From Octopus bimaculoides (lineage: Eukaryota): DNA of 64,000 nt. The notes under the pieces are model-generated. The model did not search any database and had not been told where the DNA came from. It saw only the letters and a program-made list of their open reading frames with translations. Each line of letters begins with the position of its first letter. The first letter of the stretch is position 1. Made by a program: the position numbers and the translations under genes. Positions 1 to 58,501 of the stretch are shown in pieces. The stretch spans positions 30,431,192-30,495,191 of the forward strand of contig NC_068997.1 of the NCBI RefSeq assembly GCF_001194135.2, given 5' to 3'.

Positions 1-599
1 TGAAGAAAAGAAAGAAAAAGAAAAACAAAGAACTCTTGTTAATTGTGACGTTAAATAGTGGAAAAGAAAATAGAGAACTTTGTTGTTACATGTTTTAAAA
101 GAAAAGAAAAACAAAGAAGCAAAAGAACTTTTAAATGACTCTTGATACACAAACTTTGCTATGTAAAAATGATTGAAAAACTTTGTAATTGTTTGGAAAC
201 TTTGTTGTTAAATGTTATTGAATGTTTTGTTTTGTTTTGAAAAAAAGGTAGTTTGACTACGCAACGTATTGTCTGTGTTATTTCTTCTTTTTGTTGTCAT
301 TGTTACGTGCTCCGCGGGCTTAGTGGCTGACATCCTGATTCACTGAACGTCGTCATCGCACGCGCGAGTTTTCTCGCCGAAGGTCTCGCGCAGGCGTTCG
401 TAACAATATGTATGTATCTATGTATGCAAATGAATATTTGCATATGTGGATGTGTATGTTAAAAATATATATTACATATAAATATATGTATATGTATGCG
501 TCTATGTATAAATATAAAACACTCATACATACATATATAAAATTTGACAATAACCTCAACATATTGTATAAGTTGCAATTACTTATGTACTGCTTGGGT

Positions 600-1600
600 A
601 AATAATCTATAATTGAATGGTCTGTCTAAATGCGTTAATAGAATACGAAAGTCTATGATTTATAATGTATAATATATAGAACATATATAATGTATAGAAT
701 ATGACATATAACGTGACCCACACCCTAGGGTGGTCGGGATTTATCCAATTTTTTTATGCGTACATTGGTACTTTTACATCGCACTAAAATCAATATTCAA
801 GAACAAACACACATATATGCAGGACACTGTACAAGTAGTTTTAATGTTCCTTTTAAACAGTATAGCAGGACCATTAGGTAATTCCGTGGTGTATCTTCAA
901 AGAGTGTATCACAGGATGTTTTCAGTTAGGGGAATTTAAGTTATCTAACTATTAAGTTTTTTGTAATAGATGTCTTATAATGATATACTGTTCCTATCGT
1001 ATTGTGAAAATGTACGTTTGTTTGTAGGCAAACAACTGATCAATCACTCCAAAAACCTATTAATAACCCTTTCCTTGATCAACAATATGCATAATGATTC
1101 CTTGGAACATAGTTGGAGTTTCCTGGAAAGAGTGTTATATGAATTAGGTTGTCTCATTATTGACCAAGTCAAGTCTTATTTAATCTTTTCATCTTTCAGT
1201 TTACAGACAAAACCTGTCAAAGATGTCGAATATCACATGTTTAATCTTACGAAGCTGGCAATGTGGTTTCTATAGTGTTTCATGAAAATGTCTGCAGATG
1301 CACCAATGTATGGGCCCCCTCTGGCTTTCACGATGCATTTGTATATTACATTGCAACTCGTACAAAAGTTCTGCAGAGGACATTTTGTTTTATCCATGTA
1401 TGAGCTTTTGTTACTGTCTGTCGTCTCTCAGTGTGAACTGCCTGTTGCCTTTGCTCCTATTTTAGGTCCGGGTTCACTGCTTCAGCTCTTGTTATTATTT
1501 TTTCCAGATTGGTTGGAAGTGTTCATTGTATTAGTGTGACTATTCCTGATGTAGATCCAAGTGACTCTTATATCATAACTGTGGATGACATCAGGTAGCC
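600..1600 (-). mobile_element. Penelope-like element 3' remnant (GIY-YIG endonuclease), degenerate
   Basis: Minus-strand frames with stops and frameshifts read KTKCPLQNFCTSCNVIYKCIVKARGGP/YIG...HIASF...LKDEKI...TWSIMRQPNSYN...LC, matching the PLE GIY-YIG C-terminus. Confidence 0.7.
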
Positions 1601-2283: not shown

Positions 2284-3516
2284 TTAGGTTGTCTGGAAAG
2301 TTCTGAACATTTTTAAGCTAAATGTTTTAATGCTTCATTGAACATGCCTGAAACGTAACACAATTAAAACATAGGCATTTCTTGAAGTGGTAGTACATCT
2401 TTTCTTTGATCCTGACTAAAAATAGTTATATTTCATTCTGGTTACCTTTTATTGACATTTGAAATGAATAACCAAAAATTTCATATTTGCGTTGTAATGC
2501 TAGTCTTTTTTTAAAGAAAGGAGAAAATGCTGCAAAGGCTTGCAAAAACATTTATGAAGTTTATGGTGATGATGCTGTAGGTGAATCAACTGTTCAAAGG
2601 CAGATTGCAAAATTTAAAGCTGGTGAGTTTAGCTTGGGAGATGACAGTCACAGTGGAAGACCTTCAAAATTGGATGAAGATGTTTTGAAGGCAAAAATAA
2701 CTAGAGAATTAACAGAGGAGTTGTAAATTTCTAAAAGTATGGCTCATGAACACCCAATGAAGCTAAGATAGATTTCTTGCTATAATATATTGGTCCCTCA
2801 CAAACTCTCAGAAAAGATTTGCATGGACCAGTATTCTTTTGGTGATATTCTTTAGAAATGGAATAACAACATGGTTTCTTTGAAACAGCTTGTAACTGGA
2901 GATGAGAAATGGATTGCCTATGAAAATGTAGTGCGAAGAAGATCCTGTAGTTTGCATAAGGATACCTCAAAACAGCAACCAAAGACAAAAAAACTATGCT
3001 TGTGTTTAGTGGGATCATAAAGGCATTATCTATTATGAGCGTCTCTCACAAAACCAGACCATTAATTCTGATGCGTACTGATGTCAGCTGGTTAATTTGA
3101 ACCCCAAAAGTCAAAGAGGTTGCCAACAAGAAAGGGATTCCAACAAAACAATACCTGACCACATGTGTCTTTGGCTACCCAAATAGAATTACATGAACTT
3201 AGCTGGGATCGCTTACCCCATCCACCATATTATACTGATATTGTGCCATTTTGCTACAACTTGGTTTTGTCTCTGCAGAACTCATTGAAGGAAAAACATT
3301 TAACAATTTAGATGGTGTCTAAATGCATCTAGGTAACTTTTTACTTCTAATCCAGTAAAATTTATGTTGATGGAATTTTTAAATTGCCTGATAGATGGGC
3401 AAAAATCATTAAAAATAATGAAAATTATTTTATTAAATAGAATGTTTTGAAAGGTCAGCTATTTATATCCCTTTTTGCATATTAAAAAATCACTCAGAAC
3501 TTTCCAGGCAACCTAA
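2284..3516 (+). mobile_element. Full-length but inactivated mariner DNA transposon (1233 bp)
   Basis: TIRs ttaggttgtctggaaagttctga (2284-2306) and tcagaactttccaggcaacctaa (3494-3516) match 22/23, each flanked by TA. Transposase remnants: KGENAAKACKNIYEVYGDDAVGESTVQR..HSGRP, TGDEKWIAYEN, PHPPYYTDIVP. Many stops and frameshifts. Confidence 0.92.
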
Positions 3517-20352: not shown

Positions 20353-20385
<33 letters not shown>

Positions 20386-33685: not shown

Positions 33686-36600
33686 TCACACACATACATG
33701 TGTATATGTTCTTAAAAAGATATGTGTGTATATGTGAGATTCTACAAGACTCAAAATTTTCTCAAAGACACTGTTTTATATAAGTGAATGAATATGATTT
33801 TAACAAAGACTGAAATCAGGATGGAGACTCACCTCAACCGAAACTTAGTTCAATTTTAATATGACTCACCTCTCAATACTGATATCAATATCCTTTGTTA
33901 AAGAAACAAATCTGTAGGAAATGAATATAATCAGTTGACTGGGTTGCAATATGTTAGTAATATTTACCTTATCATACTTTGAATAGTGAATGGTACAACA
34001 GGCTCACATGTAACAAATTGGTATTCTAACCTGGGAGAGATTTATTACTCGCATTTAACATCATAAAACCAGCTGTAAATAACAGCCTTTAAAACCCCTC
34101 AAGGCCTTCAGAAAACTGTAGAGGAGAGTTTACTTAAAATTTACTTACCAGCTGGTATACAGTTTTAATATGTGGTTCAGTTAACCATTCTTTCAAGTTA
34201 ATTTCATATTCCTGAAAAAGTTTCACAATATTAGTCATATCTTCCTCTAGTACAGATATCATAAATTTATCCAACTTGCCAATCTGAAACGAACAAAAAG
34301 CAAAATGTATTTTGAGGAGGGTTACAGGAATCATAAATACTAACCAGACTATTAAAATCCAATTTTCAATGGAGGAGGGTAAATCTCTTCCTGGTAATAA
34401 AGTGCAGAATTTACTATTGTATGTCATGTTTGCTCCTATGATTATCACATTTCTATTTCAGAAGATTAAAGACTGTACAAGAAGTGGCATATGATACAAT
34501 ATTTTGTTTTTCTTCTTATTATTATTTTTTGCTTATCTGAACATTTTCCCTTTTTCTGACTTTCACTCTATGAGGTAGGTTGAAAGTATGAGGTAGGGAT
34601 CTGTATGTAGCTAATTTATACAGGGTTGGGTGGCGGAACTGGAAGTAAAACCCTCGGGTTTGCCAAAGCCCTTGTGGCCCTTATCCCCAAGAACTGCCAC
34701 ATTTTGTTGGCAAATAGCCTTTATAGAAATATATATATATATATATATATAAGTAAATAAATGGAGTTAAACGCAGATGTTATTCAAATCCTTTTACTTT
34801 TGACATATGTTTCGAAGACAACATTGGTTTTATTCCAAAGGAATAAACGGTGTAAAATAATGTAATCTCCTCATCAGTAAAGAAAGAGAACCAATCTCAA
34901 CAACAAGAAGACATTATAACAATTATGAAGACTGCACAAATAATAAACAGAATGCTATTAAGTATTTAAAAAACCGTTAGTAGATCTGATGTCAAAGGTT
35001 GACCATAGGAAGAGAAGGGGTAAAGAAATAATAAGTAGAGAACAAAGAAAGGAGAAATATAGAGCGATATGTTGGTTGGAAAAATGTTCAAAGGCTTGGA
35101 AGTGGATTTATCTATTGAAGTAGAGTGCAAGGTGAACTAAATGCTCAAACCATACAGACTGGTATAAATCATTCATATGAGCCAAAGGTGTGTTTCTGCC
35201 AATGCCTACATTTGTAAGATCGCTCTATAAGCGTGTTAACAAGGTGATTCTTAGGGAAGAGAATATGGAAGAGTTCAAAATTACAAATGTTACAGAATCC
35301 TTTGCCCTTATCGTAAGGGAAAGAGATGGGATGAACCAATCTAAATTAAAACTCTTATTGTCTTTAAGATACCAAACCAAAGACAACAATAAGAATTTTA
35401 AGTTAGATTTAGCTGTAATTTTGTGAGTGACTGCACATTTTGTCGTCATCATCTTGAAAATAGCATATGTTGTCAATATTTGTAAACAACACATATTATG
35501 TCTCTGGTAATTTTCTTTTATCTAAATAAATGTTTATGTTAATTTAAAAGAGAAAAACAGTTTTAAATCTCTGTGCGAGATGTTGACAAATTAACTTTAA
35601 TTTCAAAGATTTATCAAAAAAATTTTATTTAGCTGTTATTTTTAGCATACATCACAACCACCTCAATGCTCAATGACAAAAATAAATGAGTAAACAAGAC
35701 TGCTGTCAACATGTGCTTCCCCGCAGACTTTTCAAAGACTGTTACTATGGCAACAGGCAAAAAAGTTCTCATGTTTCAGCTTGTTACTCTTGAAACAGGC
35801 CAAGGAGACTGAATGGAGACTGACGAACCCAATGCTCAGATACGAGCTGGAGCCAACGATCAAAAACGGACATGAACGTGTCTTTGGCTTATGATTGGCT
35901 AAAATTACCAACATTTTCAAACTTAAATTACTAATAACTCCTTATTTATTGATTTATAGCAAAATTTACTTTCATGTCATTAATTAGCCTACAAAAGTGT
36001 AGTATCCTTACACCAAATATAAAGTCAATTTGAACTGAAAATTGACGCTAGCAGCCACTGGCAACCACACAGAAAAGATCCTTAAATTTCATTAACCAAT
36101 GGGAATTAATTGATCAATATGGATCTATATTAATTTCCTTTTAGGGGTGATGAGCATGACCAGGTGATGGTATGCATACATGTGTGTGTGAATGTGCCCA
36201 CATATTTATGAATGTATGTGTATGCATGAATATGTGTGTACACATGGATGTATGTGTACATATTGGCATAGGCATATATCTCTGTGTATTTTCGAGCGAG
36301 ATCGTTGCCAGTGCCCCTGGACTGGCTTGTGCGGGTGGCACATAAAAGACACCATTTCGAGCGTGGCCGTTTTCGTGCGGGTGACACGTAAAAGCACCCA
36401 CTACACTCTCTGAGTGGTTGGCGTTAGGAAGGGCATCCAGCTGTAGAAACTCTGCCAAATCAGACTGGAGCCTGGTGTTGCCATCCGGTTTCACCAGTCC
36501 TCAGTCAAATCGTCCAACCCATGCTAGCATGGAAAGCGGACGTTAAACGATGATGATGATGATGATATGTGGGTGTATGGACATGTGTGTGTGTGTGTGT

Positions 36601-39600
36601 GTGTGTGTGTATACATATNNNNNNNNNNTAAAGAGGTGACCAGAATATTGATATCTGACATATATTCCCAGAGAGCTAACCTGAAGACAGCTGATATCTT
36701 GAGTATTGAGGCAATGGTGCACAAGTACCGGTTATGTTGGACTGGACACCTTATTAGAATGAAGGATAGTAGGATTCCTAAACAGATGCTATATGGGGAA
36801 CTTGTGAATGGAAAGAGACCCCAGCAGAAACCAAGGCTGCAATTTAAGGGCTGCGTCAAGTCTTCATTAAAGGCCTGTGTTATGCAGGAGACTGACTGGG
36901 AGAACAGTACCTGTCATCACCACAGATAGAGGAAGCAGGTTAAGGAGGTGGGAGAGGTCAACACTTTTGAGAGAGCACGTATTCAGCATGAAGAACTTAA
37001 GCATGTTGCTCAAAAGCACACTGCGTGTGTAGTGAATGGGGGAAAGCTTGGTCTGCAATGTTTGCAGTCGTATATGCTTGTCAAGAGCAGGGCTCATTAG
37101 CCACCAACATATATGAATTTTCATAATTCCTTTTCATACTTTACTAGCCAATGAAAAATGCGGACGCATGCTAACAATATTCATAACAATTAAACCTGGA
37201 AATGTAGAGGACAAGAAAAATCTCATTAAAATTAGAGCTTAAAATATTGCTGCTAAAATCAAAATTAAATGTAACTCTTAGGTACTTTTTCATATTTTTT
37301 TAAAATTCAATTAATTTCACTTTTCCTTTTTTCATTTTGATTTTATTTTTGTACTAAATGAATTAATAAAAATTTAAAAAATTTAATTTTAGCAGCAATA
37401 TTTAAGCTCCAATTTTAAAGAGATTTTTCTTGTCCTCTACTTTTCCAGGTTTAATTGTTAAGAATATTGTTGGTATGCATTCAAATTTTTCATTGGCTAG
37501 TCCAGTGATTTTTACAGATATTGCAGTAATAGTAAAATTTTAATTGAAAATGTATAAAATTATCATTTTTTGGAGTCATTTCGAATTCAAAAATTTCCAA
37601 GGAAATTCAGACAAAATTTTGATTTTTTTCATTTGACTAATTCTCATTTAGAAATTAAATTAAAAATGAATGATAATTATTGCAGCTTTGCGTTTTCTGG
37701 ACATAATGTACATACTGTAATTTCAGTACTGTAAAGAGACATAGTTACAAATGAATATATTTAAAGAATTTTTAAAATTATGAAAAGAAAATAATATAAT
37801 TTAATAAAATGACTTTATTTTAAATAAAGTAAATTAAATCAATATTGAATAGAATATAATTACAAGTAGCATTTGCCTTTTCTGAACAGTCTTACTACAG
37901 ACTTCCGTACTGCTCATAGAGACAAAGCCACAAATAATCATATTCTATTTACTATACAATTAATAAATAAATTATAAACTAAGTTATTTTTAGCATGCAA
38001 ATAATTAGCACCATGTTTGAAAATTTTAAAATAGTGAAAATTGACTGTTAAAATATTTGAATTTTTGTCATTTGCCTTTTCTGAATAGCCCTACTACATG
38101 ATCCAGTACTGCTCATAGAGACAAAATCAAAAAAATGATATTTTATTAAATAATCTTGTTATTAAAATAATTTATTTAAAAATGGACTTTAAAAGGCCAT
38201 ACTACAAAAAACTAAGCAAAAAAATTTCATTTTTTATAAAAAATAGTTTATCAATTTGTGTTGTCTTTTAAATTTTGTTGTGTGTGCGTCTAAGAAATAG
38301 TTTAGTTCAACCCTACTACCTTGCATGGCAGGCTTGTCGGGAGCCCTCCTATCTCTCCTCCAGTGACCAAATCATCACCTCTCCCCCAGGAGTCCAACAA
38401 GGTGACCCATTTGGGCCCACTTTGTTCGCACTGGGCATTGATGACATCACCAAAATGGGTGTCGAGCCAGACTTCAACATCTGGTATCTCGACGATGCTT
38501 GTTTGAGGAGACCTCTGGACAGGGTTCTGCCATTGCTAACATGATAGTTGCGGAGCTTGGTTGCCGGGGTCTCCAAGTAAACAGCTCCAAATGTGAACTA
38601 TTGATCCACAACCACCCGGTTTCTCAACATCAACCAACTATTGACCTTTTTTGCAGAGTCCTTCCCTTCCATTGCAGTCCATCCCCCATCAGCTTGGTAC
38701 TCTCTAGGTGCCCCTGTCACAAACCTTGCCTTTGAGTCTATCTTCCAGTCGAAGGTGGCTACCATTGAGCAATTACTGAAAAATATTGAAGCTATCGAAC
38801 CCTATCAAGCTTTTTTCATTCTTAGGAATTACCTCTCACTCCCTAAGCTTCTATATTTATTCAGAGTCAGCTCATCTTACTGATTCTCATTGTGCCTCCA
38901 ATGCTTTGACAATCTCATTTTTGAGAAACTCGAATGCTTAGTCAATGTCAGACTCACTCTCTCCAACGTCCCACAATCAGGTTGCATTGCCCATAGATTT
39001 AGAGGTTTTGGTCTTTGTAAGTGTTTGTCCTTCCCTCTCCCCTGCTTCCTTTCTTCCACCCATGCCTGCTCCAACCTGGCAAGCAACATCCTCTCCAACA
39101 GGAACCAGTTCCAACAGGGAATTGGATGAAGCTCTCCAACACTGGAGGGAATTGGGCATGTCTGCTCCTGAGAAGGTGGAGGACTGTTGGAGTCAGAGAG
39201 CTTTGGACAACATAATTTCGAAGGCTACTTTCAACTCCCTCTTCATCCAGTCGGACCAGTTTTCAAGGTGCTGCTTACTGTCTGCTAGCGCCACATATTC
39301 AGGTGACTGGATTGGTGCCATCTCTGTGGCTAATGTTGGTGGCCTACTCAGCTTGCACGAACTTCATGTCTCCATTGCCCTCAGAGTGGGAGCTGATGTA
39401 TGCACGGGTTTGATTTGTCATTGTGGCAGGCTCCTCAACTTCACAGGCCTCCATAGCCTTTCTTGCTGCCTGAATGCTGGTTGCTTCAGGCATCATATGG
39501 AGCTGAACCTGATACTCAAGAAGAGCTTGACCCAGAGAAATGACCCCCTCCATCTTGGAACTATCTGGATTGTCCAGATGTGGTGGTAAGAGACCTGACG

Positions 39601-44400: not shown

Positions 44401-45466
44401 CTGTAAAACTTTTCAGGAGTTCATCATTTAAGTATATATGAGCATGTCTAGATATGCAAATATACAAATCTCACATATACATACACGCATGTTGATGTTG
44501 CTGAAATTCCAAGGAAGAAGCCTTGAATGTAAGTTAGAAACTGGCTTTCTCTATATTGGCAAGAAATGCTAAAATAAAACTGCATAATGATATACATGCA
44601 TACATATATGCATACATGCCTACTTTTTATGCATGCATGCATGCATATATGTCAATATCTTTCTGTATATCCTATTCAGTGTGGATATACTTTGGCATTC
44701 ATCTGAACAACCATCAAGAACAAGCTTTTACCCAGCCTGCCAACTTCTCAGTATCAATAGAGACTAAATTTACCCAAGCACGTATCTCATAAGATTTGTA
44801 TATTTAAGTGAGGCTGACAGTCTTTGAGTATTCCTTTATGGCTAACTTGTGTCTTTTGTCATATAATTGCATGTAAAGTACTAATCCATAATATACATAA
44901 ATGTAGATATACATGTAGTATAAGTGCAGGCAGGTACCATAGGTGTGGCCATGGGATTCTGAGGAGTCGTCTATAAAGCTAAGCACTTATAAATGTAAAA
45001 TTATTGGTCACTCTATGACCGGATATATATTTCACTGCATATAAATTACATTAATGGTCTAACTTTTTTAGAGTGTACTTCTTTTACAGATATATGATCC
45101 ACTGATGATATATATATATATATATATATATGTGTGCATGTTTGTAAAGAGGCCGAGAGAGAGGGGAGAGGCTGATGAAAAGTCAGACAAACAATTAGTA
45201 ATATTTTACAAGTATTCAAATTATTAAAATCTACTTTTACTATAAACAATATCTAAATACATTTCTTGACAGTGTATTTTTAGTTGTCACCCTCCAAAGA
45301 AGGAGAAGTAAAAATCAATTTATCAATGACTCACAATATGAACTGATGAAATAATAAATATATTATCTTACTTGCCAGGAAGTCCAATCTGTAAATAATT
45401 TATTCAGTGCATTATCAATTCTTTGCCACTTCAATGTAAGCTTCAAATTTCTACATTTGTTCTTTG
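4801..45466 (-). CDS. TRPM: Partial multi-exon TRPM-family (TRPM2/TRPM3-like) cation channel gene; 9 exons in the window, gene extends beyond both ends
   Basis: Manually spliced exons 45466-45372, 34283-34149, 22295-22154, 21947-21851, 21751-21721, 13063-12982, 8275-8187, 5282-5182, 5026-4801 total 998 nt. All have AG/GT boundaries and compatible phases, giving 332 stop-free codons. Motifs LKWQRIDNA, LFLWALFFNRKEMAFLFW, SALIANNLVKSL and FYENHAIGILDEC...QSLLTKIWMG align by eye with TRPM MHR3/MHR4/pre-S1. Symbol is family-level only. Confidence 0.9.
5182..5282 (-). CDS. TRPM: TRPM exon (MHR4)
   Basis: tactag|GGT GCT... GALPSALIANNLVKSLQEKCKDYGTSMQLQEQA GA|GTGAGT; 101 nt, phase 0 to 2. Confidence 0.92.
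6790..8013 (+). mobile_element. RTE LINE 3' fragment with repeat-containing 3' UTR and (GAT)n tail; spans gap 7129-7664
   Basis: RVKGRLYDACVRTTMLHGSETWAV...RRLRWYGHVVRMDEDSCVKKC..VEGTRGRG; tail ...ggaagggcatccagctgtagaaac...gttaaacgatgatgat. Confidence 0.88.
8187..8275 (-). CDS. TRPM: TRPM exon (MHR4 start)
   Basis: tttcag|CT AAT... NLSFATKLFLWALFFNRKEMAFLFWKEGM|GTAAGT; 89 nt, phase 1 to 0; matches the TRPM LFxWAxxxNRxExAxxxW motif. Confidence 0.93.
8560..8720 (-). mobile_element. tRNA-type SINE family A, degenerate copy
   Basis: Shares aaaggatgaaaggcaaagtcaacctcagtggaa with the other family A copies. Confidence 0.65.
9063..9285 (-). mobile_element. tRNA-type SINE family A
   Basis: Reverse complement contains B-box-like gagttcaaattcc and core gtcaactttgcttttcatcctttc...agtaccagt. 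Confidence 0.8.
9312..10990 (+). mobile_element. R4/Dong-like RLE non-LTR retrotransposon, 5'-truncated, flanked by (AAT)n
   Basis: MKFGLEKCAK (RT end), INTLAVPVISYSY, HPKSDIERLYI, CRIYGD..TINHIISGCPVLAKKEYILRHD (zinc knuckle), ANRPDIVV...KE.EKLSKYKNLE (REL endonuclease); (AAT)n on both sides. Confidence 0.9.
11005..11222 (-). mobile_element. tRNA-type SINE family A
   Basis: Same core as 9063-9285. Confidence 0.8.
11236..11330. repeat. (GAT/GGT)n then (GGC)n microsatellite
   Basis: Direct reading; source of the poly-M and poly-I ORFs. Confidence 0.9.
11340..11632 (+). mobile_element. Short non-autonomous element with 3' terminal hairpin (possibly Helentron/DINE-1-like)
   Basis: gtttcatttgaatccatccagcggttctggagatatc core and terminal stem-loop acctccacctt-cgct-aaggcggaagt followed by (TAA)n. 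Confidence 0.4.
11672..11890 (-). mobile_element. tRNA-type SINE family A
   Basis: Same core as the other copies. Confidence 0.78.
11900..12530 (+). mobile_element. Old R4/Dong-like LINE fragments
   Basis: WYEYHPGPVIEGKNITILWDFPINTNRTIQVNQPNIIIKDREENTFRLIDVNVPTDMNISVKE (REL domain). Confidence 0.75.
12538..12738 (-). mobile_element. tRNA-type SINE family A
   Basis: ggcaaagttgacctcggcagaatttgaactcgg core. Confidence 0.8.
12982..13063 (-). CDS. Probable TRPM exon (variable linker)
   Basis: tttttcag|AAA AAT... KNTNLTVDSTCEEFLQSKFLSEIHQEQ G|GTTAAG; 82 nt, phase 0 to 1 fits neighbours; no conserved motif. Confidence 0.7.
13500..17107 (+). mobile_element. Near full-length degenerate RTE LINE (APE + RT + 3' UTR)
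   Basis: VGTLKGRSSEIVEILERRCVDVCCIQEVRWRG (APE), SAYAPQ, NCYKGKDDVLDRNSYRGIKML, QFGFVTGRNTTDVIF, FVDLDNTFDRVP, VYVDDL; 3' tail ending in (GAT)n. Confidence 0.92.
17110..17275 (+). mobile_element. tRNA-head SINE family B
   Basis: tgtgtggtaagaagcttgct...ggtttcaggtttagtcccattg A/B-box-like head; reverse copy at 20200-20350. Confidence 0.75.
18385..19500 (-). mobile_element. RTE LINE 3' fragment with 3' UTR
   Basis: Reverse complement matches the 15975-17107 family (EESCVRKFHSLTVEGTCRSGRLRKTWDE); tail tcatcatcatcgtttaatg. Confidence 0.88.
19502..20181 (+). mobile_element. Non-coding Penelope-pLTR/retrozyme-like element: 518-bp unit, partial tandem repeat, 21-bp inverted end
   Basis: About 140-bp direct repeats at 19524-19663 and 20042-20181. 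19502-19522 is the exact reverse complement of 19742-19762. Contains a hammerhead core; no ORF. Confidence 0.7.
19852..19925 (+). ncRNA. Type-I minimal hammerhead ribozyme motif
   Basis: CTGATGA (19863-19869), stem II CCTG/CAGG plus distal ATTTAC-ttat-GTAGAT, GAAAC (19906-19910), palindromic loop CATG, cleavage triplet GTA (19915-19917), stem I TTAC/GTAG. U-U replaces G10.1-C11.1 and 2.1/1.1 is an A-C mismatch. Confidence 0.65.
20200..20350 (-). mobile_element. tRNA-head SINE family B
   Basis: Reverse complement of the 17110-17275 type. Confidence 0.78.
20460..21100 (-). mobile_element. Penelope-like element 3' remnant (GIY-YIG)
   Basis: MTESPFRITFNTNPHF...VHYNIKWMILEKCKPYLDNRKRDKLCLIGK matches the PLE endonuclease C-terminus; upstream boundary approximate. 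Confidence 0.7.
21721..21751 (-). CDS. Probable 31-nt TRPM micro-exon
   Basis: cttcacag|A TAT TCT GGC TAC AAT TCT ATT CAA ATT TTG|GTAAGA (YSGYNSIQIL); phase 2 to 0 is what is needed to join 21851 to 13063. Confidence 0.55.
21851..21947 (-). CDS. Probable TRPM exon
   Basis: ttttaag|GT CTG... LINEFKMHNDKQIQRQFEIDHIEIFITIAKI AG|GTACAG; 97 nt, phase 1 to 2; only open frame. Confidence 0.72.
22154..22295 (-). CDS. Probable TRPM exon (low-conservation insert)
   Basis: ccattcag|ATA GTT... IVVENLEKSNKGERKDQSASCKSGKPCFSKGFDLRQMDQPKKHLPYC G|GTAAGA; 142 nt, phase 0 to 1. Confidence 0.72.
22637..22840 (+). mobile_element. tRNA-type SINE family A
   Basis: gagttcaaattctgctgaggtcgactttgcctttcatcc (B-box plus core). 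Confidence 0.82.
24350..25348 (+). mobile_element. Tx1/L1-like LINE copy 1, 3' fragment
   Basis: SLAWQCYREALPIR, CLRYGESDETVLYALVQCP (C-terminal zinc motif); 3' UTR matches 30180-30500; followed by (TCTG)n(TCTA)n. Confidence 0.85.
25407..30500 (+). mobile_element. Tx1/L1-like LINE copy 2, apparently full-length (about 5.1 kb), degenerate
   Basis: ORF1 from 25726 with CCHC knuckle CYLCNSETHLKNDC. ORF2 from about 27010: MLTTININ (APE), KSQGLDGLPYELY, NFRLITLLNADLKILAK, LDQSKAFDRIDH, YAEDV, C-terminal CSRCGQSDETILH. AATAAA at 30488; (ATCT)n at both ends. Confidence 0.93.
30528..33480 (+). mobile_element. Tx1/L1-like LINE copy 3, 5'-truncated at APE, internally deleted
   Basis: IAISETRH, VYAPSLTGRPDFFRHLEVFL, KSPGLDGLPYELY, LDQSKAFDRVDH, AYMDDI. 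Confidence 0.9.
34149..34283 (-). CDS. TRPM: TRPM exon (MHR3)
   Basis: gtttcag|ATT GGC... IGKLDKFMISVLEEDMTNIVKLFQEYEINLKEWLTEPHIKTVYQL|GTAAGT; 135 nt, phase 0 to 0; resembles the TRPM stretch [38 protein letters not shown]. Confidence 0.9.
34750..35500 (-). mobile_element. Penelope-like element 3' remnant (GIY-YIG C-terminus plus pLTR with hammerhead)
   Basis: VWYLKDNKSFNLDWFI / GKGFCNICNFELFHILFPKNHLVNTLIERSYKCRHWQKH at about 35190-35400, followed on the same strand by a hammerhead core. Confidence 0.75.
34791..34890 (-). ncRNA. Type-I hammerhead ribozyme motif with extended stem II
   Basis: Minus strand: TTTCTTTA CTGATGA GGAGATTACATT ... TTTATTCC ttt GGAATAAA ... AATGTTGTCTTC GAAAC ATAT GTC AAAAG. 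Stem II pairs 11/12 including canonical G10.1-C11.1; palindromic ATAT loop; GUC cleavage between 34802 and 34801. Confidence 0.75.
36290..36565 (+). mobile_element. RTE 3' UTR-only copy (SINE-like tail)
   Basis: Near-identical to 7720-8010; ends gttaaacgatgatgat. Confidence 0.88.
36630..37110 (+). mobile_element. RTE (BovB-like) LINE 3' fragment, second family
   Basis: HKYRLCWTGHLIRMKDSRIPKQMLYGELVNGKRPQQKPRLQFKGCVKSSLK. Confidence 0.85.
37143..37501. repeat. About 360-bp foldback inverted repeat (MITE/DNA-transposon-like)
   Basis: Arms actagccaatgaaaaat...ttaaacctggaaatgtagaggacaagaaaaatctc...atattgctgctaaaat and its reverse complement ending atttttcattggctagt. Confidence 0.85.
37870..38150. 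repeat. Pair of about 70-bp direct repeats in AT-rich DNA
   Basis: atttgccttttctgaa...tactac...gtactgctcatagagacaaa at about 37870 and about 38070. Confidence 0.75.
38290..39990 (+). mobile_element. CRE-clade RLE non-LTR retrotransposon 3' fragment
   Basis: GVQQGDPFGPTLFALGIDDI, IWYLDDA (RT); CHCGRLLNFTGLHSLSC (zinc motif); KRPDGLT, AAEQNRILKYCDL..YPVEFETYCG (REL endonuclease). Confidence 0.8.
42000..44430 (+). mobile_element. Old R4/Dong-like LINE, heavily degenerate
   Basis: WLDYKKAFDSVPHSW, FFVDDLKLY, NTVFAVPVLIPTFG, HINSNVDRPYL, REL-region remnants near 44040-44200. Confidence 0.82.
45372..45466 (-). CDS. TRPM: TRPM exon (MHR3 start)
   Basis: tattacag|CA AAG... KNKCRNLKLTLKWQRIDNALNKLFTDWTSWQ|GTAAGA; 95 nt, phase 1 to 0; resembles QLSLALAWNRVDIARSEIF. 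Confidence 0.88.
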
Positions 45467-57548: not shown

Positions 57549-58501
57549 TATATATATATATATATATATTTGTTTTGCAAGATTTTTGATGTAAAATCGT
57601 GTGTTGAAACAGATGTTGTTGTACTTGGGGATGGTCATATTGCCAGTTTTGCCAATAAAAACACACGCACTGNNNNNNNNNNNNNNNNNNNNNNNNNNNN
57701 NNNNNNNNNNNNNNNNNNNNNNNNNNNNNNNNNNNNNNNNNNNNNNNNNNNNNNNNNNNNNNNNNNNNNNNNNNNNNNNNNNNNNNNNNNNNNNNNNNNN
57801 NNNNNNNNNNNNNNNNNNNNNNNNNNNNNNNNNNNNNNNNNNNNNNNNNNNNNNNNNNNNNNNNNNNNNNNNNNNNNNNNNNNNNNNNNNNNNNNNNNNN
57901 NNNNNNNNNNNNNNNNNNNNNNNNNNNNNNNNNNNNNNNNNNNNNNNNNNNNNNNNNNNNNNNNNNNNNNNNNNNNNNNNNNNNNNNNNNNNNNNNNNNN
58001 NNNNNNNNNNNNNNNNNNNNNNNNNNNNNNNNNNNNNNNNNNNNNNNNNNNNNNNNNNNNNNNNNNNNNNNNNNNNNNNNNNNNNNNNNNNNNNNNNNNN
58101 NNNNNNNNNNNNNNNNNNNNNNNNNNNNNNNNNNNNNNNNNNNNNNNNNNNNNNNNNNNNNNNNNNNNNNNNNNNNNNNNNNNNNNNNNNNNNNNNNNNN
58201 NNNNNNNNNNNNNNNNNNNNNNNNNNNNNNNNNNNNNNNNNNNNNNNNNNNNNNNNNNNNNNNNNNNNNNNNNNNNNNNNNNNNNNNNNNNNNNNNNNNN
58301 NNNNNNNNNNNNNNNNNNNNNNNNNNNNNNNNNNNNNNNNNNNNNNNNNNNNNNNNNNNNNNNNNNNNNNNNNNNNNNNNNNNNNNNNNNNNNNNNNNNN
58401 NNNNNNNNNNNNNNNNNNNNNNNNNNNNNNNNNNNNNNNNNNNNNNNNNNNNNNNNNNNNNNNNNNNNNNNNNNNNNNNNNNNNNNNNNNNNNNNNNNNN
58501 N

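What the first reader, a model, noticed from the sequence alone, without database searches (positions are those of the whole stretch)
34791..34890. Hammerhead ribozyme motif on the TRPM sense strand, about 510 nt upstream of an exon acceptor
Seen in sequence: the minus-strand core CUGAUGA / GAAAC-AUAU-GUC has an 11/12-bp stem II (canonical G10.1-C11.1) capped by a second hairpin (UUUAUUCC/GGAAUAAA). It lies about 300 nt downstream of a Penelope GIY-YIG remnant on the same strand. That strand is the TRPM pre-mRNA, inside the 11,088-nt intron ending at 34284. Established knowledge: PLE pLTRs encode HHRs, and intronic HHRs are known in vertebrate genes. Inference: if active, it could cut the channel pre-mRNA co-transcriptionally and affect splicing. 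A monomer with a 2-bp stem III and an A-A mismatch at 1.1/2.1 is probably slow.
Basis: partly seen in the sequence, partly recalled or inferred. Interest (0 to 1): 0.72.

Follow-up and report, generated by a model that had tools for sequence, protein, structure and literature searches.

The report
Retrotransposon hammerhead relic in TRPM intron
The motif is a genuine hammerhead-ribozyme sequence, but it is the leftover 3' end of a broken Penelope-like retrotransposon that landed in a (TA)n repeat inside a TRPM channel intron; this is an ordinary kind of genomic relic and nothing indicates that it cuts the channel's pre-mRNA.

Summary
On the minus strand, 34890-34789 holds a complete type I hammerhead core: CUGAUGA, GAAA, A15.1-U16.1 and C17. 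It has an 11/12-bp helix II with G10.1-C11.1, a 2-bp helix III inside the perfect palindrome ACAUAUGU, and a 10/13 helix I. No such motif appeared in 1000 dinucleotide shuffles.

It lies about 290 nt downstream of the stop codon of a decayed GIY-YIG endonuclease tail (35345-35172). It lies 50 nt upstream of an (AT)11.5 repeat. Independent copies found in public assemblies show the same order: RT-like ORF, endonuclease, spacer, hammerhead, 43-50-nt tail, (TA)n. The endonuclease motifs match the published 'Hydra' clade of Penelope-like elements.

Four copies of the window's own subfamily give the consensus CUGANGA...GAAAC-AUAU-GUC, with compensatory changes in helix II. The strand is the TRPM sense strand, inside an 11,088-nt intron.

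Against function here:
- Rfam hammerhead models do not score it.
- It is a lone copy with no partner for the dimer that these ribozymes need.
- Positions 1.1/2.1 are A-A, where relatives have C-G.
- The canonical monomer fold is 6 kcal/mol above the predicted minimum.

Verdict: a new member of a known kind (PLE hammerhead relic). An effect on TRPM is unsupported.

The parts
35172..35345 (-). C-terminal tail of a decayed PLE GIY-YIG endonuclease: ...FCNICNFELFHILFPKNHLVNTLIERSYKCRHWQKHTFGSYE, followed by the stop codon at 35171-35169.
   Evidence: A profile of independent endonuclease sequences matches at E = 2e-9, profile positions 113-161 of 164. The exhaustive HMMER search returned relatives P0002 and P0004-P0007.
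35346..35430 (-). Probable upstream continuation of the endonuclease remnant in another reading frame (...LSLVWYLKDNKSFNLDW...). It is separated from the tail by a frameshift. Further upstream the element is truncated or unrecognisable.
   Evidence: Joining the two frames raises the profile score from 34.8 to 40.9 bits and extends the match to profile positions 83-161. On its own the upstream piece scores only 2.4 bits.
34891..35168 (-). Spacer (3' untranslated / pLTR-like region) between the endonuclease stop codon and the hammerhead.
   Evidence: It is colinear with copy L001/L002. A spacer of about 270 nt is seen in copy L012.
34878..34890 (-). Hammerhead helix I, 5' strand (UUCUCUUUCUUUA).
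34871..34877 (-). Catalytic box C3-A9 (CUGAUGA).
34814..34870 (-). Helix II, 57 nt. The proximal 12-position stem is 34870-34859 with 34825-34814. The distal 8-bp hairpin is 34847-34840 with 34836-34829.
   Evidence: present in the predicted minimum-energy fold. Four pairs change on both sides among the four copies.
34802..34813 (-). G12-A14, helix III (A15.1 C15.2 - AUAU - G16.2 U16.1, inside the palindrome ACAUAUGU) and C17. The predicted scissile bond is between 34802 and 34801.
   Evidence: Cofolding predicts an intermolecular helix III in a dimer.
34789..34801 (-). Helix I, 3' strand (AAAAGUAAAAGGA). A1.1 faces A2.1.
34752..34801 (-). 50-nt 3' tail of the element, running from the cut site to the target repeat. 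It overlaps the helix I 3' strand.
   Evidence: The tail is 50 nt in L001 as well, and 43-45 nt in L006, L008 and L014.
34729..34751 (.). (AT)11.5 microsatellite, the presumed insertion target.
   Evidence: Tandem Repeats Finder. Hydra-clade PLEs insert into (TA)n (PMC8557442).
34285..45372 (-). TRPM intron that hosts the insertion.

Best explanation
The site is the 3'-terminal hammerhead of a 5'-truncated, decayed Penelope-like retroelement of the Hydra-like clade. The element inserted in sense orientation into a (TA)n tract of a TRPM intron.

In the living element the hammerhead sits between the endonuclease stop codon and a 43-50-nt tail. By analogy with other PLEs (inferred from the literature) it processes element transcripts. 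It works as a dimer formed through its palindromic helix III when two copies are on one RNA, and possibly with help from the element's protein.

In this locus only one copy survives. It has kept all core nucleotides but has a mismatch at 1.1/2.1. It is therefore most likely an inert passenger of the intron, or at most a very slow self-cleaver.

Shown here: the motif, its non-random nature, its colinearity with the endonuclease remnant, its presence at the same place in independent copies, and its orientation within the TRPM intron. Inferred: its role in the element's life cycle, and its inactivity here.
For: Motif and statistics.

Endonuclease remnant upstream on the same strand.

Intact relatives from marine metagenome contigs:
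- They carry a CxCx5C linker, IIY...YTG with no Cys between the two motifs, and CNLC..E...LNSRNE..CRH. Pfam GIY-YIG hits are just below the cut-off. This matches the description of the Hydra clade in PMC8557442.
- Contigs L013 and L014 show an RT-like ORF with a YRDD box (precomputed RVT_1 hit 'weak'; group II RT E = 0.007). This is followed by the endonuclease, about 75 nt of spacer, a hammerhead, a 44-nt tail and, in L014, (TA)n (L013 has no (TA)n after the tail).
- L005, L007 and L008 carry the same hammerhead. Helix III stays quasi-palindromic through an A-U to G-C double change.

Copies of the window's own subfamily:
- L012 reads CUGAAGA...GAGAC-AUAU-GUC.
- L001 reads CUAACGA...GGAAC-AUAU-GCU.
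- L004 reads ...GAAAC-AUGU-GUA.
- Core identity between the window and L012 is 13/15, against 61% at non-core positions.
- The structure pairs 66.9% of cells, against 35-50% when partners are slid. Helix II pairs 75% of cells and has four pairs changed on both sides.

Other support:
- The dimer cofold is -43.8 kcal/mol, against -36.8 for two monomers, and forms an intermolecular helix III.
- (AT)11.5 lies 50 nt downstream of the cut site.
- The literature places hammerheads with a short palindromic helix III and a long helix II in PLE pLTRs, mostly as single motifs in truncated copies, with single motifs inactive in vitro (PMC4209133).
Against: - No Rfam hammerhead model scores the site, even at E up to 10. 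Rfam also misses the relatives.
- A covariance model built from the metagenome hammerheads (L005, L007, L008) does not detect the window's motif. The link between the two subfamilies is therefore positional and architectural, not sequence-level.
- No RT remnant is recognisable upstream in the window.
- RT identity in the relatives rests on weak hits and a motif read by eye. My own Pfam scan and a PDB search found nothing.
- Only four diverged copies of the window's subfamily were available. The shuffle control for covariation is modest: 22 to 111 of 500 shuffles reach the observed values.
- Inactivity in vivo is inferred, not measured.
Confidence: 0.8

Rival explanations
1. An active intronic ribozyme. 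The hammerhead self-cleaves within the nascent TRPM pre-mRNA and lowers or modulates channel mRNA output. It might act alone, with a protein chaperone, or by pairing through ACAUAUGU with transcripts of other copies. This would resemble the conserved intronic ribozymes of amniotes.
For: The core is complete and G10.1-C11.1 is canonical. It is in sense orientation within a confirmed intron, about 518 nt upstream of the acceptor. All 15 core positions are retained in an otherwise decayed copy. A PLE hammerhead can be protein-assisted (PMC11167929).
Against: - Helix III is 2 bp, and the canonical monomer fold (-12.3 kcal/mol) is 6 kcal/mol less stable than the predicted minimum.
- Positions 1.1/2.1 are A-A, where L012 and the metagenome copies have C-G.
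- There is no partner copy in 64 kb.
- Single PLE motifs were inactive in vitro (PMC4209133).
- Chance retention of the core is plausible in a family that probably has many copies.
- No evidence of conservation at the orthologous site was obtainable.
- Vertebrate retrozymes are depleted from introns, which argues that active sense copies are selected against (bioRxiv 10.64898/2026.07.22.740005).
Confidence: 0.05
2. A chance match to the hammerhead consensus in AT-rich intronic sequence.
For: Rfam is silent. The fold energy is ordinary, z = -0.55. A loose CUGAUGA...GAAA...UH pattern is as frequent in the window as in shuffles. One relative, L001, has a mutated core at the homologous place.
Against: None of 1000 shuffles reaches the observed helix II plus helix I quality. 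The motif sits at the same place relative to the endonuclease stop codon and the (TA)n target as hammerheads in independent copies. The four-copy consensus is a hammerhead, and helix II shows compensatory changes.
Confidence: 0.04
3. A solo unit of a non-autonomous retrozyme (a small hammerhead-bearing tandem repeat mobilised by PLEs) rather than the end of an autonomous PLE copy.
For: Animal type I hammerheads are often carried by retrozymes that share pLTR sequence with PLEs (PMC7229834 abstract; bioRxiv 10.64898/2026.07.22.740005).
Against: The hammerhead is colinear with an endonuclease coding remnant in the window and in three other copies (L001/L002, L012, L013/L014). There is no tandem unit or second hammerhead nearby.
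Confidence: 0.05

Closest known systems
[quoted passage not shown]
   Same: Type I topology with helix I open. Helix III is very short and embedded in a palindrome, implying a dimeric active form. Helix II is longer than usual, and G10.1-C11.1 is present. It lies downstream of the PLE ORF. It occurs as a single motif in a truncated copy, which that paper describes as the commonest situation.
   Different: Helix II is far longer (57 nt, a 12-position stem plus a second hairpin) than the 6-8 bp reported. [quoted passage not shown] Helix I is long (13 positions) rather than 4-5 bp. Positions 1.1/2.1 are mismatched.
Hydra clade of C-terminal EN+ Penelope-like elements (Craig et al. 2021, PMC8557442)
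   Same: [quoted passage not shown] The insertion abuts (TA)n. A hammerhead is present. Relatives carry the CxCx5C linker and lack Cys between GIY and YIG.
   Different: The window keeps only about 80 residues of the endonuclease and no RT. The clade's RT markers (DKT, RWK) could not be checked. The paper calls the clade's hammerheads 'canonical', whereas Rfam models detect neither the window's motif nor those of the relatives.
Conserved intronic hammerheads of amniotes (Rfam HH9 and HH10; named from my own knowledge, reviewed in PMC6155905, not read here)
   Same: A hammerhead on the sense strand of a protein-coding gene's intron.
   Different: Those are stable monomeric ribozymes with tertiary contacts, conserved at orthologous positions. 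This one has the dimer-type helix III, is tied to a decayed transposon, and has no demonstrated conservation.
Metazoan non-LTR retrozymes (PMC7229834)
   Same: A type I hammerhead with a short palindromic helix III, related to PLE pLTRs.
   Different: There is no tandem array and no second ribozyme, and the motif is contiguous with coding remnants of the autonomous element.

Membership tests
Hammerhead ribozyme (type I) | Conserved core: C3 U4 G5 A6 N7 G8 A9, G12 A13 A14, A15.1-U16.1, H17 | tested here: met
   CUGAUGA at 34877-34871, GAAA at 34813-34810, U16.1 at 34803 and C17 at 34802.
Hammerhead ribozyme (type I) | Three helices around the core, with helix I open | tested here: met
   Helix II has 11/12 pairs plus a distal hairpin. 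Helix I has 10/13 pairs but is mismatched at 1.1/2.1. Helix III has only 2 bp.
Hammerhead ribozyme (type I) | Score at or above the gathering threshold of an Rfam hammerhead covariance model | tested here: not met
   No hit at gathering score on the window. No hammerhead hit at E up to 10 on 34500-35200.
Hammerhead ribozyme (type I) | Covariation supporting the helices among homologues | tested here: inconclusive
   With four copies, 66.9% of cells pair, against 35-50% when partners are slid. Helix II has four pairs changed on both sides. The shuffle control reaches the observed values in 22-111 of 500 shuffles. The structure was derived from the window sequence.
Hammerhead ribozyme (type I) | Site-specific self-cleavage 3' of position 17 | not testable with these tools
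   Needs an in vitro transcription and cleavage assay.
PLE-associated hammerhead | Located in the repeat region flanking a PLE RT-EN ORF, on the same strand | tested here: met
   It lies about 290 nt downstream of the endonuclease stop codon. The same order is seen in L001, L012, L008, L013 and L014.
PLE-associated hammerhead | Short helix III with palindromic 15.2-16.2 and loop 3, compatible with a dimer | tested here: met
   ACAUAUGU is a perfect palindrome. The dimer cofold gains 7 kcal/mol over two monomers. Relatives keep quasi-palindromes ACAAUUUGU and ACAGACUGU.
PLE-associated hammerhead | [quoted passage not shown] | tested here: not met
   The best register pairs G10.1 directly after A9. 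The bulged register pairs worse (read).
PLE-associated hammerhead | Second copy nearby (pLTR-ORF-pLTR or tandem arrangement) | tested here: not met
   There is no second motif or repeat of the region in the window.
Hydra clade PLE | [quoted passage not shown] | tested here: met
   CNIC...E...LVN...CRH in 35345-35172, aligned to the profile of intact relatives.
Hydra clade PLE | CxCx5C linker and no CCHH cysteines between GIY and YIG | tested here: inconclusive
   Present in relatives P0008-P0014 and P0019. This part of the protein is not preserved in the window.
Hydra clade PLE | Insertion into (TA)n | tested here: met
   (AT)11.5 at 34729-34751, directly after the 50-nt tail. The same is seen in L001, L006, L008 and L014.
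Hydra clade PLE | PLE-type RT with the clade's DKT and RWK motifs | tested here: inconclusive
   No RT remnant is recognisable in the window. Relatives L013 and L014 have an upstream ORF with a YRDD box but only weak RT hits. The clade markers were not identified.
Conserved intronic hammerhead (HH9/HH10 type) | Conservation at the orthologous intron position across species | not testable with these tools
   The host organism and its relatives are not in the searchable collections.
Non-LTR retrozyme | Tandem repeats of a short non-coding unit, each carrying a hammerhead | tested here: not met
   Tandem Repeats Finder and the repeat search found only the (AT)n tract. The motif is contiguous with coding remnants.

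The most novel reading that the evidence does not exclude
The relic is not inert. It retains every catalytic nucleotide, so the sense-strand hammerhead might cleave a fraction of nascent TRPM pre-mRNA. It could be helped by a chaperone, or by pairing through its ACAUAUGU palindrome with transcripts of sister copies. That would make a transposon-derived ribozyme a brake on expression of an ion-channel gene in an invertebrate.
Probability: 0.04. Interest if true: 0.55.

Novelty: new member of a known kind. Interest (0 to 1): 0.2.

Why it matters
As found, this is routine repeat annotation. PLE-derived hammerhead motifs occur by the hundreds to thousands in many animal genomes, mostly as single motifs in truncated copies.

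Two points have modest practical value.
- Rfam hammerhead models miss this subfamily and its marine relatives, because helix III is short and helix II is long. Genome annotation that relies on them will under-count such motifs.
- The fixed layout (endonuclease stop, spacer, hammerhead, 43-50-nt tail, (TA)n) is a convenient signature for recognising 3' ends of Hydra-like PLEs.

It would matter for TRPM biology only if cleavage were demonstrated.

Tried and rejected
- Rfam scans of the window, the local region and seven related loci gave no hammerhead hit. The only local hits were sub-threshold noise: SNORD15 at 11.5 bits against a gathering score of 75, HSUR and snoZ40. I considered a C/D-box snoRNA because CUGAUGA contains a C box. 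I rejected it because no D box (CUGA) follows and the score is far below threshold.
- Word-indexed protein searches found nothing, either with the 58-aa endonuclease tail or with the spliced TRPM peptide. The host's proteins appear to be absent from that collection.
- In the exhaustive search, the two top hits (P0001, P0003) are zf-met zinc-finger repeat proteins that match only the G.GFCN.C stretch. I rejected them as unrelated.
- A metagenome scan with a 20-mer from the relatives' hammerhead returned three chance hits, two of them (L009, L011) on contigs encoding RHS-like repeat proteins, with no endonuclease.
- A covariance model built from L005, L007 and L008 did not recover the window's hammerhead, with or without filters.
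- An exact look-up of a 214-aa window ORF, meant to identify the organism, found nothing on record.
- A Pfam scan and a PDB search of the relatives' RT-like ORF gave no hits.
- The other endonuclease remnants in the window (1427-1047 and 20796-20515) showed no recognisable hammerhead downstream.
Full report
**The motif.** The minus strand of 34890-34789 reads as follows:

UUCUCUUUCUUUA | CUGAUGA | GGAGAUUACAUU...UUUAUUCC-UUU-GGAAUAAA...AAUGUUGUCUUC | GAAA C AUAU G U C | AAAAGUAAAAGGA

- Every invariant hammerhead position is present: C3-A9 at 34877-34871, G12-A14 at 34813-34811, A15.1-U16.1, and C17 at 34802.
- Helix II pairs 11 of its first 12 positions, starting with G10.1-C11.1, and ends in an 8-bp hairpin.
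- Helix I pairs 10 of 13 positions, but 2.1/1.1 is A-A.
- Helix III is two base pairs closed by AUAU. Together they form the perfect palindrome ACAUAUGU.
- Helix I is the open helix, so this is a type I hammerhead.

**Is it more than chance?**
- A loose pattern (CUGAUGA...GAAA...UH) is no commoner in the window than in shuffles.
- A descriptor that also demands the helices finds this site and only one other candidate. That other site pairs just 2 of 12 helix I positions.
- Among 1000 dinucleotide-preserving shuffles of the window, 16 contained a site with helix II of at least 8 pairs. None had helix II of at least 10 together with helix I of at least 9/12.
- On the other side, no Rfam hammerhead model scores the site, at gathering threshold or at E up to 10 in a 701-nt scan.
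- The predicted folding energy is ordinary: z = -0.55.
- The predicted minimum-energy fold keeps helix II and most of helix I. The full canonical monomer fold evaluates to -12.3 kcal/mol, against -18.4 for the minimum.

**Host gene.** The peptide obtained by joining the minus-strand exon that ends at 45373 to the one that starts at 34284 aligns without a gap across the junction. It matches residues 410-478 of TRPM7 and the equivalent parts of TRPM5, TRPM8, TRPM3 and TRPM2 (E = 1e-7 and weaker). The splice sites are gtaag and tttcag. The hammerhead is therefore on the TRPM sense strand, in an 11,088-nt intron, about 518 nt upstream of the acceptor.

**The neighbouring coding remnant.**
- The reading frame 35345-35172 on the same strand ends in ...FCNICNFELFHILFPKNHLVNTLIERSYKCRHWQKHTFGSYE, followed by a stop codon. 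Pfam does not recognise it.
- An exhaustive HMMER search of 1.84 billion representatives gave five small proteins with the same tail: P0002 and P0004-P0007, E = 2e-8 to 5e-4. It also gave two unrelated zinc-finger repeat proteins.
- A profile search with these sequences returned P0008-P0015 from marine metagenome contigs.
- The intact members read ...CxCx5C..G.C...IIYQATI......YTGLS.N.FK.R.TQH.S.FR....TTLSKKVW.LK....V.WKI....Y....CNLC.SE..HILF....LNSRNE...CRH....SNFKT.
- Pfam GIY-YIG hits fall just under the cut-off, at 17-20 bits against 22.6.
- These features match what Craig et al. 2021 describe for their 'Hydra' clade of C-terminal-endonuclease PLEs (PMC8557442). Those features are a CxCx5C linker, no CCHH cysteines between GIY and YIG, CxxC and CxH on either side of the catalytic E and N, hammerheads present, and insertion into (TA)n.
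- A profile built only from the metagenome sequences finds the window fragment at E = 2e-9.
- Joining it across a frameshift to the upstream frame raises the score to 40.9 bits and extends the match to profile positions 83-161 of 164.
- No RT remnant is recognisable further upstream. The copy is 5'-truncated or decayed beyond about 35430.

**The same layout in independent copies.**
- Contigs L013 and L014 carry an upstream ORF with a YRDD box and weak RT hits (precomputed RVT_1 'weak'; group II RT E = 0.007). My own Pfam scan and a PDB search found nothing for this ORF.
- After that ORF come the endonuclease, about 75 nt of spacer, the hammerhead CAGAC|CUGAAGA|UUGGUAAAG-UGUUAA-CUUUGCCAU|GAAAC-AAUUUGU-A|GUGUGAAUG, a 44-nt tail and, in L014, (TA)n.
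- L008, L007 and L005 carry versions of the same ribozyme. L006 has helix II deleted.
- Between L008 and L007, helix III changes from ACAAUUUGU to ACAGACUGU. This A-U to G-C double change keeps the quasi-palindrome.
- Helices I and II also stay paired despite sequence changes.
- In these copies 10.1/11.1 is U-U. Rfam does not call them either.

**Copies of the window's own subfamily.** These come from Logan assemblies of runs SRR11869390, SRR11869391 and SRR11869394.
- L012 has the endonuclease, about 270 nt of spacer, then C|CUGAAGA|helix II|GAGAC-AUAU-GUC|GG. That is one core change, and 2.1/1.1 is C-G.
- L001 and L002 read CUAACGA...GGAAC-AUAU-GCU, followed by a 50-nt tail and (TA)n.
- An inverted partial copy in L004 reads ...GAAAC-AUGU-GUA.
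- The four-copy consensus is CUGANGA...GAAAC-AUAU-GUC.
- The window and L012 agree at 13 of 15 core positions, against 61% elsewhere.
- On the four-copy alignment the hammerhead structure pairs 66.9% of cells, against 35-50% when partners are slid.
- Helix II pairs 75% of cells, and four of its pairs change on both sides. Examples between the window and L012 are A-U to U-G and U-G to A-U.
- The shuffle control is only moderately exceeded (22-111 of 500 shuffles), and the structure was taken from the window sequence. I count this as supportive, not decisive.
- A covariance model built from the metagenome hammerheads does not find the window's motif. The two subfamilies therefore share position and architecture, not detectable sequence.

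**The 3' end.** (AT)11.5 occupies 34729-34751. The stretch from the cut site to the repeat is 50 nt in the window and in L001, and 43-45 nt in L006, L008 and L014. There is no direct repeat, tandem unit or second hammerhead within 33800-36800, or elsewhere in the window.

**How it most likely works.** In PLEs the hammerhead lies in the pseudo-LTR. The metazoan forms have a minimal, palindromic helix III.
- Single motifs showed no detectable cleavage in vitro. Dimeric or helix-III-extended constructs cleaved weakly (PMC4209133).
- The Anolis Poseidon ribozyme cleaved only in the presence of the element's protein, and no cleavage ends were seen in RNA-seq (PMC11167929).
- For the window RNA, cofolding two molecules gives -43.8 kcal/mol, against -36.8 for two separate monomers. 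An intermolecular helix III forms and both helix II arms stay intact.

I therefore read the site as the processing ribozyme of the element's own transcript, preserved in a dead copy. In the TRPM intron it has no partner copy and has a broken 1.1/2.1 pair where the relatives have C-G. The probable outcome is no cleavage, or negligible cleavage. Retention of all core positions in one copy of a multi-copy family needs no selective explanation. A recent preprint reports that vertebrate retrozymes are depleted from introns (bioRxiv 10.64898/2026.07.22.740005). That finding fits the idea that active sense-strand ribozymes in genes are selected against.

**Comparison and novelty.** This is a PLE hammerhead relic, a known kind. 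Its unusual points are the 57-nt helix II, the long helix I, and the absence of the bulge between positions 9 and 10.1. Rfam models do not detect it. These are variations within a class described as extremely variable. The functional idea of cutting TRPM pre-mRNA remains possible but has no support. I put it at about 4-5%.

**Limits.**
- The host organism was not identified.
- The orthologous intron could not be examined.
- The RT of the family is only weakly recognised.
- The subfamily comparison rests on four diverged copies.

Noticed in passing
window 1427-1047 (minus): A second decayed endonuclease remnant of the same Hydra-like family: CPLQNFCTSCNVIYKCIV...YIGASADIF.KHYRNHIASF (profile E = 1e-5) and a C-terminal piece at 1175-1047 (E = 0.02). 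No recognisable hammerhead follows it.
   Followed up: partly
window 20796-20515 (minus), with (TA)n at about 20354-20381: A third endonuclease remnant (..VHYNIKWMILEKCKPY..., profile E = 0.006). About 130 nt downstream lies a (TA)n tract. This is the same element-then-(TA)n layout, but the hammerhead core is not recognisable.
   Followed up: partly
window about 58688-58500 (minus), beside the assembly gap 57673-58501: A weak match (E = 0.2) to a different, canonical PLE-type GIY-YIG: NVVYSIRCTEGRC...TYVGETARSIGER, with cysteines between GIY and YIG. This suggests a Penelope-, Poseidon- or Neptune-type copy interrupted by Ns.
   Followed up: no
window 38275-38544 (+) and 36567-36929 (+): LINE-type remnants in the same intron on the opposite strand. 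One is an RT fragment with an (Y)LDD box. The other is a C-terminal tail of the ...LRW.GH..RM.DSRIPKQ.LYGEL... type, which I recognise from memory.
   Followed up: no
window about 20350-20230 (minus): A tRNA-derived SINE-like sequence directly after the (TA)n tract. From memory it resembles the abundant octopus SINE, which would make the host a cephalopod. This was not tested.
   Followed up: no
window 2843-2910 (+): The covariance model of the metagenome hammerheads gives its only window hit here (16.3 bits, E = 0.41). It contains UGAAACAGCUUGUAAC, which resembles the GAAAC-palindrome-GUA half of a hammerhead, but it has no CUGAUGA box. It is either a decayed relic or chance.
   Followed up: no
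loci L005, L007, L008, L013, L014: The hammerheads of the intact marine-metagenome elements have U-U instead of G-C at 10.1/11.1. No Rfam model calls L005, L007 or L008 (L013 and L014 were not scanned), although all five keep all other core positions and covarying helices.
   Followed up: partly
locus L004 1-150 (minus) and 402-1034 (+): An inverted partial copy (hammerhead 3' half plus tail) lies just upstream of another copy of the endonuclease remnant. This is the inverted-truncated-copy arrangement described for PLE insertions.
   Followed up: no
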